Source: Cyanophora paradoxa CCMP329 (lineage: Eukaryota; Plantae; Glaucophyta). Taken from it: a stretch of 64,000 nucleotides of DNA. The notes under the pieces were generated by a model. It had not been told where the DNA came from, did not search any database, and saw only the letters and a list, made by a program, of their open reading frames with translations. Positions 27,425-31,106 of the stretch are shown here, piece by piece; position 1 is the first letter of the stretch, and every line of letters begins with the position of its first letter. The translations under genes were made by a program, and so were the position numbers. The DNA lies in contig QPMI01000022.1 of assembly GCA_004431415.1 (NCBI GenBank), positions 434,001 through 498,000 of the forward strand. Reading direction: 5' to 3'.

Positions 27425-28800
27425 CTACGGGGCGGCGCCGAGGCCGAGGGCGGCGGCGTGGGCGGGGCAGAGCCAGCAGACGGCCCCGCGCGGGCTCTTC
27501 AGGAGCGTCTTCCGGAGGCCGCCCAGCGCCTGCCGCGGGTCGGCGCCCCTCAGCAGCTCCTCCAGCGCCCGCCGCATCCCGTCCTGGGGCGCAGGCGGGG
27601 TACGGGCCTCAGGTGGGGCTGGGGGGCGCGCAGGGCCGGGCACTCGGCGCACGCGGCACTCGGCGACGGCGGCGGGGCGGCCGGCGTTGAAGGCGGCGAT
27701 CTCGTCGGCGGCCTCGCGCAGCTGCGCCGCGGCGTCCCGCCCCAGCCGCCCGCGATCGCCCGCCCGTCCAGGCCCCTGCATAGCTAGCTCGACGGCCCGC
27801 GGCGGAGGCGGGCGGGCGGGCGGGGGCGGCACCGCACCGGTCGGCGAGGGCGTCGATGCCGAGGCGGGCGGCGGCCTCGGCGACGGGCTCCGGCACGGAG
27901 ACGCCCACCGCCGCGTCCAGCGCCACCGACAGCAGCTGCGCCCCGCTCGATCCCGTACCCCCCCCCGCTCCGCTCCGCGCCCGTACCCCCCGGACGCACC
28001 TTGAGGCCGATGGCGATGTAGGGGCCCGCCTTGGCGACGAACTCCTTCGGCTTGTCGATCGCGTACCCCTCGTGGTCCGTCATGTGCGCCTGCCCGGCAG
28101 TCAGGCCCGGGCCCGGCGGAGGGCGGGGCGGGCGGCGGCTCGAGCTCGACGCGCCTTGCCGGGGCATTCGCAGAGCAGGTGCAACCGGACCTTGTTCACG
28201 AGCCAGTCCGCCGGCCTCCACCACTTGCGGTCCTGCGGGGCGCGCCGGCCCGCTCGCTCGCACGGGCGAGGGCGGGGCCCGGGCGTTTCGGGGTCCGCCG
28301 ACCTTTCTGTTGAAGGGGAGGAGGACGTAGAGGCTCGGCACGCGGCACTGGTCGACGTTGAGCTGCGGCCCGCGCGCGGGGCGTGAGCCCGGCGGGCGGC
28401 GCGGGGCCGCGAGGACGGGCGGGGCGGGCGGCGCACGACGGCGAGCATCGCGTCGACGATCATCGCCTTCTGCTCGGCCATCTCCCCCAGGAGCCAGCGG
28501 TCCTTCTCCAGCTGCCGCGCCGCCGCCTCCTGCACACGTACCCCCGTCGGGCGCCTCCCGTACCCCCGGGCAGGGCGGGCGGGCTCCACGCACGGCCTGC
28601 GCCTGCTGCTGGGCCTCCAGGAGCACCTGCGCGGGCCTAAGGGCGCGGGGCGCAGAGGGAAGCGGCGGGGCGGAGCGGGGGACGGACGGCGATCTTGTCG
28701 AGCTGCTGCTGCATGCCGCCCGCCGCGAGCTCGCGACCGACGACGCCGGCCGCCCGCGCCCACCGCACGACCGCCTCGACCTGCCCGAGCTAGCATTGAG

Positions 28801-28836
<36 letters not shown>

Positions 28837-31106
28837 GGAGGAGGGGGGCAGAGGTAAAGGTGATTGGGGCGGGGGGGGGGCGAGGAGGGGAGGTGGGGGG
28901 GTAAGAGGGTGCGGCGACGGGCCTTGTGCGTGTCGCGCGCGTCGGCGCCGCCGGAGAGCCTCGCGGCCTGCGCCGCGTCGGCGGCGGCCTCGCTGCAGAC
29001 GCGGGCGACGGCCCTCGCGAGCTGCTCGGCGGAGAGGTCGCAGCGGCGTCCAGGGGGCTACGCAGCGGCGTCCAGGGGGGTACGGTGCGGGGCGCACGCC
29101 GACGGGCACCCAGCGTCGGGCACCCAGCGCGTCGCCTGGTGCTTCTTGCACGCCCGGATGTCCCCCGGCATCGCCTCGTCCGCCGGCCACGCGGCCCCCT
29201 CGCAAACCACCGGCACGATCCCCTGTCGAGACCGCGTGAGCAGAGCAGAGCAGGGGGAGACTCGGGACGGGCGGCACGGCCGCGCCTTGCGGAGGCGGCA
29301 GGCGCGGGCGATCTCGCGGCGCAGCCAGTCGCCCGCCGCGCCGCAGCCGTCGAGGGCGCCTGCGGAGAGCAGCAGCACGAAGCACGCCGCCGTGTCGATT
29401 CGCTCCTGCGCAACGCCTGAGAGGAGTGCGGGCGGCGCGCCGGGCGAGCTCTGCCGGGCGCGGCGCACCAGGATCTGCTCGTCGAAAGGGCCCGCCTCCA
29501 AGTTCTGGTCCCAGAACACGGCGAAACTGCAGCATGCAAAGCTGCATCAGTGTGCGCGGGATGCTTGGAGGCATCATTGCGCACCCGCGAGAGGCCAGGC
29601 GGTCGCGGACGATCTGCGCGCGGTCCCGCGCCGTGCGGCGGTACGAGAGGAAGACGTGGTGCGTGAGCCTGGCGCCGGTCAGCGAGAGGGGAGGAGAAGC
29701 GTCCAGCGGGAGGCGGTACCCCGCGGGCAGGGCCGGAACGACCGCGGGCGCCGGCGCCAGTGGGCTCGGGGATGGAGCGAGCTGGTGGGAGTGGGCCGCA
29801 AGGCCGTACGGTCGCGCTAGCTCCGAGATCTGAGCCGGTGCGTTGCGAGTCAGAAGGACGATACGAGCGAAGGGGGGAGGGGGGAAGAAGGACGAAGAAG
29901 GACGAAGGACGCGTACGACCTCTATGCCGTCGTGCGGCAAGGGGGGGGGGGGGGGGGGAGGGGGGGCGGAGGCGGGCGTGCTTCCTTGAGGATGCGGCGG
30001 CGGACGAGGCCCGAATCGACGCCGAGCTCCTCGCGCAGGTCGCCCTCCGTCAGCTCCAGCAGCATCTTGCCGTCGACGGCGCAGCCCTCGAAGGCCGGGG
30101 CCAGCCTGCCGAGGTCGAGGGAGCGGAGCCACACGCACACGTCCGCCACGCGCATGCCCCGCGGTCCCGCGCCGCGGCGGCGGGGGCGGGCGCTGCCGGC
30201 GCGGATCCGGATCCACCGGCGGGCGCCGCGGCGGGCAAGGCCGCACGGGCGGCCGCCGCAGAGGCGGCTGCGCGCTGGCGTCGGAAGGCTGGAAAGCGCG
30301 AGCGGGCGTGGCGTGCGCGGACCGGGGTTGAAGGGGCGTAGTACTGGGCCGCTGCGCGGGGGCGTGAGGCACGGGGGGCCCGCTGCTCGAGCGGTGAACG
30401 TACCGGGGGCCGGGGCGGCGGGGCGCGGGGCGGCGGGTGCGGGCTGCGGAGGGGGGTGAGGGGCGGGGCGCGGGGGCAGGGCGGCGGGGCGCACCGCGGG
30501 GGCGGGGGCGGGGAGGGAGCGGAGGTAGGTCACGACGGCGGCGCACTGGGCTTCTTGGGAGACGGACAACGCATTGGTGTTCTCGTTGACGACGCGGCGG
30601 ACGGGCTCTGGCCACGAGGCCACGACGGGGTTGCCGTGCACGTACAGCCCCTGCAGGGCGGCGAGGCGGCCGATCTCCGGCGGCAGCGCCGTCAGCCGGT
30701 TGCCGTTCACGTACAGCCACTTCAGGGCGGCGAGGCGGCCGATCTCCGGCGGCAGCGACGTCAGCTGGTTGTCGCTCACGTGCAGCTGCCACAGGGCGGC
30801 GAGGCGGCCGATCTCCGGCGGCAGCGCCGTCAGCTGGTTGCCGTACACGACCAGCGTCTGCAGGGTGGCGAGGCGGAAGAGCTCCGGCGGCAGCGCCGTC
30901 AGCTGGTTGCACGGCAACGACAGCTGCTCCAGGTTCGTCATCTTGGCGAGCTCGGCGCCTGGGATGCTCGTGAGCCTGTTGTAGCTGAGCTCGAGATGGC
31001 GGATGTTCTTGGGCCCCACCGCCGCGATCTCCGCCGCCGGCCACTCCGTCCGCCCCTCCCACCCCAGGTCCAGCAACCCCTCCGCCGGCATCCACCCTCT
31101 GCCCAT
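27425..31106 (-). CDS. LRR - SAM - TIR (SARM1-like) - coiled coil - Roco/TRN1-like C-terminal domain protein, multi-exon
   Basis: LRRs LTALPPEIGRLAALxxLxVxxNQL (~30620-31000); SAM VADVCVWLRSLDLGRLAPAFEGCAVDGKMLLELTEGDLREELGV (~29985-30155); TIR VFLSYRR / VFWDQNLEAGPFDEQIL / FVLLLSAGALDGC..DWLRREI / IVPV (29107-29665); tail VRLHLLCE, HEGYAIDKPKEF, CWLCPAH. Confidence 0.85.

What the first reader, a model, noticed from the sequence alone, without database searches (positions are those of the whole stretch)
27425..31106. LRR-SAM-TIR protein with a SARM1-like catalytic TIR: candidate protist immune receptor/NADase
Seen after splicing four exons: VFLSYRR...VFWDQNLEAGPFDEQILERIDTAACFVLLLSAGALDGC...DWLRREIARA...IVPVVCEGAAWPADEAMPGDIRA. 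From memory this closely parallels the SARM1 TIR (VFISYRR...LEAGKF...FVLVLSPGALDKC...DWVHKEI...IVPI...WP...LPEDM). The WxxxE catalytic Glu is retained (codon 29313-29315). A SAM domain precedes the TIR as in SARM1, but the ARM sensor is replaced by ~5-6 LRRs. A coiled coil and a Cys/His domain (RLHLLCE...HEGY...WLCPAH) reminiscent of Roco/TORNADO1 C-termini follow. Inference: a one-chain sensor-oligomeriser-effector system (LRR sensing, SAM oligomerisation, NAD+ cleavage) with an architecture I do not recognise as characterised.
Basis: partly seen in the sequence, partly recalled or inferred. Interest (0 to 1): 0.85.

Follow-up and report, generated by a model that had tools for sequence, protein, structure and literature searches.

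The report
Algal LRR–SAM–TIR gene resembling SARM1
A gene of the alga Cyanophora paradoxa joins a leucine-rich-repeat sensor to a SAM–TIR module clearly related to the animal NAD-destroying enzyme SARM1, so this "cell-death enzyme" module exists, in a new arrangement, far outside animals.

Summary
On the minus strand (31106–27425) lie six LRRs, one SAM domain and a four-exon TIR domain. The exons match a public Cyanophora paradoxa model exactly (tig00000113_g5699). The SAM–TIR part matches human SARM1 at E 1e-32. No other solved TIR family comes close. All 50 best fold matches are SARM1 or TIR-1. The Glu at 29315–29313 aligns with SARM1 E642, and the BB-loop Gly is kept.

The public annotation splits the locus. 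The coiled coil plus Cys/His domain is a separate model, g5698. Two in-frame introns, exon-like codon bias in the linking exons, a missing last TIR helix in g5699 and a collinear paralogue favour one gene. This is not proven.

The C-terminal domain is a widespread family with no Pfam, NCBIfam, PADLOC or solved-structure match. It follows Roc–COR or kinase modules in bacteria, algae and fungi.

The gene is a mosaic. Its LRR and SAM are 70–91% identical to sister genes, but its TIR only 38–40%. It belongs to a clustered family pairing one LRR head with SAM–TIR, TLR-like TIR or RING tails.

NADase activity and an immune role are inferred, not shown. I rate it a new variant of a known kind, of moderate interest.

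The parts
30495..31106 (-). Exon 1. It holds the conserved N-terminal segment (starts MG) and six LRR units of the Roco/SHOC2 type (P0001 residues 1-204).
   Evidence: Exact mapping of P0001. Pfam LRR_8 E 1.4e-21 and LRR_4 9e-20. It is 71-77% identical to paralogues.
29982..30443 (-). Exon 2 of the public model. It holds a Pro/Ala/Arg-rich linker and then the SAM domain (SAM from ATG 30155 to 29982). The stretch about 30400-30270 looks intronic although it lies in the public CDS.
   Evidence: SAM_1 E 6e-12. The SAM matches SARM1 SAM at E about 4e-12 and the model superposes at rmsd 0.7 A. GC at the three codon positions is flat over 30400-30270.
29719..29829 (-). Exon 3. It holds the end of the last SAM helix and the SAM-TIR linker. 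Similarity to the sister genes ends here (PALPAG).
   Evidence: and the comparison with paralogues.
29584..29668 (-). TIR exon a (strand A, SYRR motif, helix A).
29469..29525 (-). TIR exon b (strand B and the BB loop, LEAG-F).
   Evidence: In one search it aligns with the SARM1 BB loop, including the Gly equivalent to G601.
29286..29405 (-). TIR exon c (strand C and helix C). It carries the W-x-x-x-E motif, with the Glu codon at 29315-29313 (P0001 E473).
   Evidence: This Glu is invariant among the eight TIRs aligned.
29124..29222 (-). TIR exon d up to the conserved Trp (strand D, helix D, strand E).
   Evidence: the Trp aligns with SARM1 W683. GC3 is 0.97.
29058..29123 (-). Candidate 66-nt GT-AG intron. 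The public model reads it through to the TAG at 29060-29058. An alternative GT donor lies 12 nt downstream, and an alternative in-frame CAG acceptor lies about 30 nt into the link exon.
   Evidence: My reading of the sequence. Its codon-position GC is flat and intron-like, 0.77/0.73/0.86. The residues it would encode are disordered, pLDDT about 30.
28923..29057 (-). Link exon 1 (not in any public model). It is the probable last TIR helix (alpha-E) plus a short spacer.
   Evidence: Same frame as TIR exon d. GC3 is 0.96 and GC2 0.67, like the exons. Weak matches fall at the right place in paralogues (E 0.04), but hhalign is not significant.
28781..28922 (-). Candidate GC-AG intron (AAG|GC donor, CAG acceptor) holding a long poly-C tract.
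   Evidence: Composition is flat at 0.81/0.77/0.77. The public models use the same AAG|GC donor at two introns of this locus and GAA|GC at a third.
28688..28780 (-). Link exon 2. The 22 codons upstream of the annotated Met of g5698 are coding-like and conserved. The exon then continues into g5698 exon 1.
   Evidence: BLASTP to paralogue P0122 residues 517-546, E 6e-8. GC3 is 0.95.
28437..28626 (-). Two exons (about 28626-28594 and 28529-28437) encoding the helical, coiled-coil-like lead-in of the C-terminal module.
   Evidence: Many family members align from query positions 2-20 onwards.
27428..28362 (-). Six exons encoding the Cys/His C-terminal domain (CTD). They lie at 28362-28303, 28232-28152, 28086-28000, 27935-27834, 27784-27653 and 27583-27428. 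The stop is at 27427-27425.
   Evidence: Exact mapping of P0121. There are 518 related cluster representatives. Conserved residues are C48, E49, H55, Y62, W198, C200 and H203. The AF2 model has pLDDT 77.5.

Best explanation
The locus is a nuclear gene of the glaucophyte alga Cyanophora paradoxa. It encodes a cytosolic multi-domain protein.
- Domains: a short Roco-type LRR domain, one SAM domain and a TIR domain. The SAM-TIR module is homologous to that of animal SARM1/TIR-1.
- Probable C-terminal extension: most probably the same chain continues through the last TIR helix into a helical segment and an uncharacterised Cys/His domain. That domain otherwise sits at the C-terminus of Roco and kinase proteins.

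Proposed mechanism, by analogy with SARM1 and other catalytic TIRs:
- At rest the TIR domains are kept apart or inhibited.
- A ligand or a modified self protein is bound by the LRR.
- SAM-mediated self-association brings the TIR domains together and completes composite active sites around Glu473.
- NAD+ is then cleaved to nicotinamide plus ADPR or cyclic ADPR. This either depletes NAD+ or makes a signal.

What is shown here is the domain content, the homology to SARM1, retention of the catalytic residues and family membership. Oligomerisation, NAD+ cleavage, the trigger, the role of the C-terminal domain and any immune function are inferred.

The gene looks like a product of exon shuffling. 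A recently duplicated LRR-SAM head from a clustered gene family is joined to a TIR-helix-CTD tail, whose other copy in the genome (P0122) has a decayed TIR.
For: - Organism and models. P0001 and P0121 are EukProt Cyanophora paradoxa proteins and map exon by exon at 100% identity.
- Domains. Pfam finds LRR, SAM and TIR_2 above threshold.
- SARM1 homology. SARM1 scores E 1e-32 and C. elegans TIR-1 8.5e-25, while the next TIR family scores only E 0.68. The Foldseek top 50 are all SARM1/TIR-1, with TIR TM 0.73-0.78 and rmsd 2-3 A, and SAM rmsd 0.7 A. The Glu aligned with E642, the BB-loop Gly, SYRR and the Trp aligned with W683 are all kept.
- One gene rather than two.
  - In-frame GT-AG and GC-AG introns are available.
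  - The link exons have exon-like GC3 of 0.95-0.96, against flat candidate introns.
  - The public TIR stops at profile position 98 of 122, and its tail is disordered with no alpha-E helix. Paralogues cover the whole profile, and one tested covers the SARM1 TIR almost to its end.
  - Paralogue P0122 carries a TIR remnant, both link segments and the CTD collinearly in one model.
  - Elsewhere the CTD is the C-terminal domain of repeat-enzyme proteins.
- Mosaic origin. The LRR is 71-77% and the SAM 70-91% identical to sister genes, but the TIR only 38-40%.
- Family. Among the 120 best LRR hits are 23 C. paradoxa paralogues. They carry SAM-TIR, TLR-like TIR or RING tails and are clustered on four contigs.
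- Localisation. A hydropathy scan shows no clear transmembrane segment; the most hydrophobic stretches lie inside the folded TIR and CTD.
Against: - No transcript evidence was available. The RNA-seq-trained public annotation calls two genes.
- The alpha-E assignment of link exon 1 is not statistically supported (E 0.04-0.2).
- P0122 is itself only a predicted model.
- There is a single SAM domain, whereas SARM1 needs its tandem SAMs for the octamer. In paralogue P0025 the SAM is no closer to SARM1 than to liprin, so the SAM-TIR fusion could be convergent.
- The SARM1-specific His next to the catalytic Glu is Arg here (PMC7075850).
- A conserved Glu does not guarantee activity. Only a minority of Glu-bearing eukaryotic TIRs produced detectable products in a 2026 screen (10.64898/2026.04.20.719644).
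- No direct link to immunity was found.
Confidence: 0.68

Rival explanations
1. There are two separate genes, as in the public annotation. One is an LRR-SAM-TIR protein ending at the TAG at 29058. The other is an independent 257-residue coiled-coil plus Cys/His-domain protein starting at the ATG at 28714.
For: BRAKER/AUGUSTUS trained on RNA-seq produced exactly these two models (PMC6704402). Genes in this genome are densely packed and often end to end (PMC6704402). Short stand-alone members of the CTD family exist, for example P0125 at 260 aa.
Against: - The g5699 TIR would lack its last helix.
- Conserved, coding-like sequence extends 22 codons upstream of the g5698 Met.
- Only 343 bp separate the two models, and 135 of them have exon-like codon bias in frame with the TIR.
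- Paralogue P0122 holds both parts in one model.
- The genome authors state that the models need manual curation (PMC6704402).
Confidence: 0.3
2. The TIR is a signal generator or a scaffold rather than an NAD+-depleting executioner. On assembly it would make a cyclic ADPR isomer or recruit partners, and the C-terminal Cys/His domain would be the real output or regulatory module.
For: TIRs from diverse unicellular eukaryotes produce cADPR isomers (10.64898/2026.04.20.719644). Phylogenetic closeness of TIRs does not predict the product (PMC13142454). The window's TIR is at least as close to bacterial TIR_2 proteins as to SARM1. One of those proteins sits on a bacterial contig next to a gene with a YAcAr (SLOG-type) domain. 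The CTD follows signalling modules (Roc-COR, kinases) elsewhere.
Against: The closest characterised relatives by sequence and fold are SARM1 and TIR-1, which deplete NAD+. No receptor for a TIR product (SLOG, SAVED, EDS1-like) was looked for or seen in the window.
Confidence: 0.3
3. The gene is a recent chimeric duplicate on its way to becoming a pseudogene, and the in-frame TAG after the TIR is a real premature stop.
For: - The head and tail have different histories.
- The only other copy of the tail, P0122, has a decayed TIR without the W-x-x-x-E motif.
- A TAG lies where the TIR should continue.
- A 13-kb mobile element with identical terminal repeats sits about 750 bp from the stop codon.
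Against: All exons keep GC3 of 0.81-1.00, and 0.91-1.00 in all but two, together with intact catalytic and structural motifs. The TAG lies in a segment with intron-like composition, bounded by GT and AG and a multiple of three long. No frameshifts were seen within the domains.
Confidence: 0.08

Closest known systems
Animal SARM1 / C. elegans TIR-1 / Drosophila dSarm (ARM-SAM-SAM-TIR NAD+ hydrolases)
   Same: A SAM domain lies directly upstream of a TIR and aligns collinearly with SARM1 SAM2-TIR (E 1e-32). By my count from that alignment the TIR is about 38% identical. The fold matches at TM 0.73-0.78. The catalytic Glu (E642), BB-loop LEAG-F, SYRR and the Trp before the last helix are conserved.
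   Different: LRRs replace the NMN/NAD-sensing ARM domain. There is one SAM instead of two. The His beside the catalytic Glu is Arg. There is a probable extra C-terminal helical and Cys/His module. The host is a glaucophyte alga with several paralogues, whereas animals typically have one gene per genome (PMC7075850).
[quoted passage not shown] 2026, PMC13142454)
   Same: This is a non-animal eukaryotic TIR with closest similarity to SARM1 and to bacterial TIR_2 proteins. It is 48-49% identical to the metagenomic proteins P0274-P0276, and P0276 lies on a bacterial contig.
   Different: Glaucophytes are not mentioned in that paper's text or its held supplements. Clade membership was not tested here by a tree. 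The LRR-SAM-TIR-CTD architecture is not described there.
Roco proteins (LRR-Roc-COR, often followed by further C-terminal domains)
   Same: The LRR type and best non-paralogue LRR hits are Roco proteins. The C-terminal Cys/His domain is the one that follows COR-B in bacterial (Planctomycetaceae, Polyangium) and volvocine-algal Roco proteins. The order is the same: repeat sensor, central module, CTD.
   Different: There is no Roc GTPase and no COR domain. SAM-TIR occupies the position of the central module.
Plant TIR-NB-LRR receptors and TIR-only proteins
   Same: LRR and a Glu-bearing TIR lie in one cytosolic protein. The gene belongs to an expanded, clustered family with swapped effector domains.
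   Different: Pfam finds no NB-ARC, NACHT or other STAND ATPase. The domain order is reversed, with LRR first. The TIR is not of the plant type, and SAM is the likely assembly device instead.
Toll-like receptors
   Same: LRR plus TIR.
   Different: The hydropathy scan shows no clear transmembrane segment. The LRRs are of the intracellular type and the TIR of the SARM1 type. However, sister genes in the same family such as P0012 carry a weakly TLR/MyD88-like TIR.

Membership tests
SARM1/TIR-1 orthologues | A TIR domain whose closest characterised relatives are SARM1 TIRs. | tested here: met
   phmmer against PDB gives the SARM1 TIR alone at E 2e-19 and the next TIR family at E 0.68. The Foldseek top 50 are all SARM1/TIR-1.
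SARM1/TIR-1 orthologues | A catalytic Glu (human E642) in the W-x-x-x-E motif, and the BB-loop Gly (G601). | tested here: met
   In the alignment, P0001 E473 (codon 29315-29313) falls on E642 and LEAG is conserved.
SARM1/TIR-1 orthologues | Tandem SAM domains that form the octameric ring. | tested here: not met
   Pfam finds a single SAM stretch. That one SAM matches both SARM1 SAM1 and SAM2.
SARM1/TIR-1 orthologues | An N-terminal ARM domain with the allosteric NMN/NAD+ site. | tested here: not met
   There is no ARM match. The N-terminus consists of six LRRs.
SARM1/TIR-1 orthologues | Group-specific residues (His two positions before the catalytic Glu; Trp in strand E), as described in PMC7075850. 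| tested here: inconclusive
   The Trp is kept (it aligns with W683) but the His is Arg. Only two signature positions were checked.
SARM1/TIR-1 orthologues | NAD+ hydrolase/cyclase activity. | not testable with these tools
   This needs a biochemical assay.
Catalytic TIR domains (Pfam TIR_2 and relatives) | A Pfam TIR_2 match above the gathering score. | tested here: met
   44.7 bits against a cut-off of 28, E 2.3e-11.
Catalytic TIR domains (Pfam TIR_2 and relatives) | A complete five-strand, five-helix fold including helix E. | tested here: inconclusive
   The public model lacks helix E (profile 1-98 of 122; disordered tail). A candidate helix-E exon lies at 29057-28923, but its homology is not significant. 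The joined protein was not built.
NLR / STAND immune receptors (for example plant TNLs) | A central NB-ARC, NACHT or other STAND NTPase. | tested here: not met
   No such Pfam match was found in any exon piece or in P0001/P0121.
Roco proteins | A Roc GTPase followed by COR-A and COR-B. | tested here: not met
   There is no Roc or COR match. Only the flanking LRR type and the post-COR C-terminal domain are shared.
Unnamed post-COR/post-kinase Cys/His C-terminal domain family | Full-length similarity, with the conserved C-E...H...Y and W-x-C-x-x-H motifs. | tested here: met
   There are 518 representatives at E<=1e-3, and 87 of the 153 family sequences then held matched over nearly the whole domain. 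Conserved columns are C48, E49, H55, Y62, W198, C200 and H203.
Toll-like receptors | A signal peptide, an extracellular LRR domain and a transmembrane helix before the TIR. | tested here: not met
   The maximum 19-residue hydropathy is 1.7-1.8, inside folded domains. No dedicated signal-peptide or membrane-topology predictor was run.

The most novel reading that the evidence does not exclude
Cyanophora has a family of intracellular LRR receptors that work without a STAND ATPase. In it the SAM domain would be the ligand-triggered polymerisation device that switches on a SARM1-type TIR NADase. On this reading the SAM-TIR death module predates animals, or moved between eukaryotes, and was plugged by exon shuffling into a Roco-like chassis (LRR ... 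Cys/His CTD) in place of the Roc-COR switch. That would be an independent, third solution to building an LRR-TIR immune receptor, beside TLRs and plant TNLs. It would also give the first functional context for a widespread unnamed C-terminal domain.
Probability: 0.25. Interest if true: 0.8.

Novelty: new variant of a known kind. Interest (0 to 1): 0.58.

Why it matters
- SARM1 is a central executioner of axon death and a drug target. Its TIR has been regarded as an animal acquisition from bacteria, and SARM1-type TIRs were thought to be confined to metazoans (PMC7075850). Only recently were they noted in a few protists (PMC13142454).
- A glaucophyte family in which SAM and TIR together resemble SARM1, but are wired to an LRR sensor, offers a natural experiment. 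It could show how the SAM-TIR module is regulated without the ARM domain, and how old the module is.
- The family swaps SAM-TIR, TLR-like TIR and RING tails on one LRR head, in tandem clusters. That pattern is typical of immune-receptor repertoires, in a lineage where innate immunity is essentially unstudied.
- The work also delimits an unnamed domain family found in bacterial and eukaryotic Roco and kinase proteins.
- It flags two public gene models that probably need merging.

Tried and rejected
- Pfam on the intron-retaining read-through of the TIR (29519-29061) found nothing, and TIR exon a alone gave only E 0.1. The domain became clear only with the public spliced model.
- A plain tblastn of the models against the window was swamped by low-complexity GC-rich matches. 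I replaced it with exact exon mapping.
- The word-indexed homologue search with the SAM-TIR region was saturated by common words. It returned only paralogues and four TIR_2 proteins, and not even SARM1. It therefore says nothing about distribution.
- The search for related loci with a TIR alignment failed because no stretch was conserved enough. With the single TIR it gave one uncultured-bacterium locus at 35% identity.
- A TIR tree including SARM1 could not be built, because no tool returned SARM1 sequences as usable ids and I did not type them.
- Profile comparison of link exon 1 with the paralogues' TIR was not significant (E 0.2), and Pfam found nothing on either link exon.
- The C-terminal domain had no match in Pfam, NCBIfam, PADLOC, PDB by sequence or PDB by fold.
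- I considered NLR, TLR and true Roco membership and rejected all three (see the membership tests).
- A scan of viral contigs with the element's 408-aa ORF found no relatives.
- Literature searches for Cyanophora or glaucophyte TIR, LRR or SARM1 found nothing relevant.
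Full report
**Source and public models.** The window is very GC-rich (about 70-78% around the finding) and the gene lies on the minus strand. A protein search with the LRR-SAM reading frame returned P0001, a 536-residue protein named tig00000113_g5699.t1. A search with a downstream frame returned P0121, named tig00000113_g5698.t1, of 257 residues. 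Proteins with this naming belong to EukProt set EP00741, Cyanophora paradoxa. The genome paper describes 67.6% GC, BRAKER/AUGUSTUS models, 9.2 short introns per gene (mean 86 bp) and models that "will require additional manual curation" (PMC6704402). Both models map to the window exon by exon at 100% identity. P0001 covers 31106 to 29061 in seven exons. P0121 covers 28714 to 27428 in nine exons. I therefore take the window to be C. paradoxa contig tig00000113.

**Check of the observation.** The ATG at 31106 and the TAG at 27427-27425 are as stated. Pfam finds LRRs (LRR_8 E 1.4e-21) and a SAM domain (E 8e-11) in the first reading frame. On the spliced public model it finds TIR_2 at E 2.3e-11, above the gathering score. 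I count six LRR units. The Glu codon is at 29315-29313.

**Is the module SARM1-like?** Yes, and strongly.
- P0001 residues 300-536 match human SARM1 chains at E 1e-32 and C. elegans TIR-1 at 8.5e-25. The isolated SARM1 TIR scores 2e-19 and the SARM1 SAM pair 4e-12.
- The next TIR family in the PDB (TIR-STING) scores only E 0.68.
- The alignment runs collinearly from SAM through the linker into the TIR.
- Counting back from W683 in that alignment, the window's Glu (P0001 E473) falls on E642. The BB-loop LEAG-F, the SYRR motif and the Trp before the last helix are also kept. By my count the TIRs are about 38% identical.
- An AlphaFold model of P0001 296-536 has a confident SAM (pLDDT above 90) and a reasonable TIR (75-84).
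- The 50 best Foldseek hits listed are all SARM1 or TIR-1. TIR TM-scores are 0.73-0.78 at 2-3 A, and the SAM superposes at 0.7 A.

It also differs from SARM1. There is one SAM rather than two and no ARM domain. The His next to the catalytic Glu, a SARM1-group signature (PMC7075850), is Arg here.

**One gene or two?** The public annotation ends g5699 at the TAG at 29060-29058 and starts g5698 at an internal Met, 343 bp further on. Several observations favour one gene.
- The g5699 TIR is incomplete. Pfam covers profile positions 1-98 of 122, whereas paralogues cover 2-121. The match to SARM1 stops about 13 residues short of where paralogue P0025 reaches. The last 19 residues of the model are disordered and there is no helix E.
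- A GT directly after the conserved Trp (29123) and the AG of the TAG (29058) bound a 66-nt segment that is a multiple of three. Removing it continues the same frame into 45 codons (29057-28923) with a helix-like, Ala-rich sequence containing a Cys, as in the paralogues' helix E.
- A donor of the form AAG|GC follows. The public models use the same AAG|GC donor at two introns of this locus and GAA|GC at a third. A CAG acceptor at 28781 then leads in phase into an exon whose first 22 codons lie upstream of the g5698 Met.
- Codon-position composition separates exons from introns here. The mapped exons have GC3 of 0.81-1.00, and 0.91-1.00 in all but the linker-containing exons 2 and 3, with lower GC2. 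The two link exons give 0.96 and 0.95. The two candidate introns are flat (0.77/0.73/0.86 and 0.81/0.77/0.77), like most annotated introns.
- Paralogue P0122 (tig00000630_g2735.t1, 839 aa) is collinear with the merged reading. It has a decayed TIR (E 8e-6 to P0001 398-450), link exon 1 (E 0.04) and link exon 2 including the part upstream of the Met (E 6e-8). It also carries the C-terminal module (E 1e-72, 56% identity).
- Elsewhere the C-terminal domain closes multi-domain proteins of the form repeat-enzyme-CTD.

There is evidence on the other side. The helix-E homology is not significant on its own. P0122 is itself a prediction. I had no transcript data. I put the one-gene model at about 0.65-0.7.

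I never built, searched or folded the joined g5699-link-g5698 protein.

The linker between the LRRs and the SAM is also doubtful. Positions 30400-30270 have flat composition and probably hold an unannotated intron.

**The C-terminal domain.** An exhaustive HMMER search with P0121 found 518 cluster representatives at E<=1e-3.
- Named members come from volvocine green algae (Gonium, Tetrabaena), Mortierella-type fungi, Glomeromycota and chytrids. Bacterial members come from Planctomycetaceae and Polyangium.
- Of 48 full-length members, 10 carry COR-A, 8 a protein kinase, and others LRR, Kelch or ankyrin repeats. No Pfam family covers the domain itself.
- Typical architectures are LRR-Roc-COR-CTD in bacteria and Kelch- or Ank-kinase-CTD in fungi. 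TORNADO1 itself was not tested.
- The domain has no match in Pfam, NCBIfam, PADLOC or PDB sequences.
- A model with pLDDT 77.5 shows a small sheet packed on long helices and has no Foldseek match in the PDB.
- Nearly invariant residues are C48, E49, H55, Y62, W198, C200 and H203. Two Cys and two His suggest a structural zinc site. That is my inference only.

**Family context and mosaic origin.**
- Among the 120 best LRR hits, 23 are C. paradoxa proteins sharing the same N-terminus and LRRs. Seven carry SAM (most with TIR_2), nine have LRR-TIR without SAM, and four have LRR-RING.
- Many of them sit in runs on contigs tig00000841, tig00000042, tig00000532 and tig00000600.
- The SAM-TIR of paralogue P0025 is also SARM1-like (E 1e-32). 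The TIR of an LRR-TIR paralogue is weakly TLR/MyD88-like.
- The window's protein is 71-77% identical to P0010, P0025 and P0033 in the N-terminus and LRRs, and 70-91% in the SAM, but only 38-40% in the TIR.
- In the TIR it is at least as close to metagenomic TIR_2 proteins: 48-49% identity and 68-75 bits against 58-66 for the paralogues. One of those proteins lies on a bacterial contig beside a gene with a YAcAr (SLOG-type) domain.
- Similarity to the sisters ends at the close of exon 3. The gene therefore looks like an LRR-SAM head joined by exon shuffling to a TIR-helix-CTD tail, whose only other copy is P0122.

**Mechanism.** By analogy with SARM1 and other catalytic TIRs, I propose the following. 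The LRR recognises a ligand. SAM-driven self-association brings the TIR domains together. Glu473-dependent cleavage of NAD+ follows, either depleting it or making an ADPR-type signal. The C-terminal module would regulate or localise the protein. Only the parts list and the homology are shown. Every mechanistic step is inferred. Rival readings are two separate genes, a signalling or scaffold role for the TIR, and a decaying chimera. They are scored in their own sections.

**Novelty.** SARM1-group TIRs were described as metazoan (PMC7075850). [quoted passage not shown] It does not mention glaucophytes in its text or held supplements (PMC13142454). The C. paradoxa genome paper does not mention TIR or LRR. 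My other searches found nothing on this architecture. I therefore rate the gene a new variant of a known kind. The gene models are public but uncharacterised and probably mis-split.

Noticed in passing
window 13604-26673: This is a 13.07-kb low-GC block (37-50% against about 70% around it), bounded by perfect 329-nt terminal inverted repeats (13604-13932 and 26345-26673). It carries long intron-less ORFs on both strands. They include a Pox_A32-type packaging ATPase (14786-15553, E 3e-14), an SF1 helicase-like ORF (24022-25287), a retroviral-type integrase (25287-26219, E 3e-5 to foamy-virus integrase cores) and a 1006-aa ORF with no match. It looks like a recently integrated Polinton/Maverick-like or polinton-like-virus element, and it ends about 750 bp from the stop codon of the LRR-SAM-TIR gene.. 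No relatives were found in IMG/VR with the 408-aa ORF.
   Followed up: partly
window 30270-30400 (minus strand), inside exon 2 of the public model: The Pro/Arg-rich linker of the public protein P0001 (about residues 218-262) has no codon-position bias and starts at a GTACGT. It is probably an unannotated intron retained in frame. Just upstream of the SAM, the paralogues' conserved AAARDPRGM reads in two different frames here, as if one base were missing.
   Followed up: partly
window 28800-28880 and 29945-29965 (minus strand): Long poly-C (poly-G on the plus strand) tracts lie in the candidate GC-AG intron and just after the SAM exon. Homopolymer length errors in a long-read assembly could shift frames near here.
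   Followed up: no
P0001 and paralogues (N-termini), window 31106-31040: The family shares a conserved N-terminal segment beginning MG. Some paralogues begin MGGGSS or MGGCRS, which looks like an N-myristoylation or palmitoylation signal. The window's copy (MGRGWM) fits less well.
   Followed up: no
L001 6001-7334: The bacterial TIR_2 protein P0276 is among the closest relatives of the window's TIR. It is followed directly by a small gene with a YAcAr (SLOG-type) domain, an arrangement that may be a Thoeris-type TIR plus signal-sensor pair.
   Followed up: no
window 29040-29085 (minus strand): An 18-nt direct repeat (CCCCTGGACGCCGCTGCG, twice, 6 nt apart) straddles the TAG that ends the public model. 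A 12-nt duplication (CGCTGGGTGCCC) creates the two alternative GT donors at 29123 and 29111.
   Followed up: no
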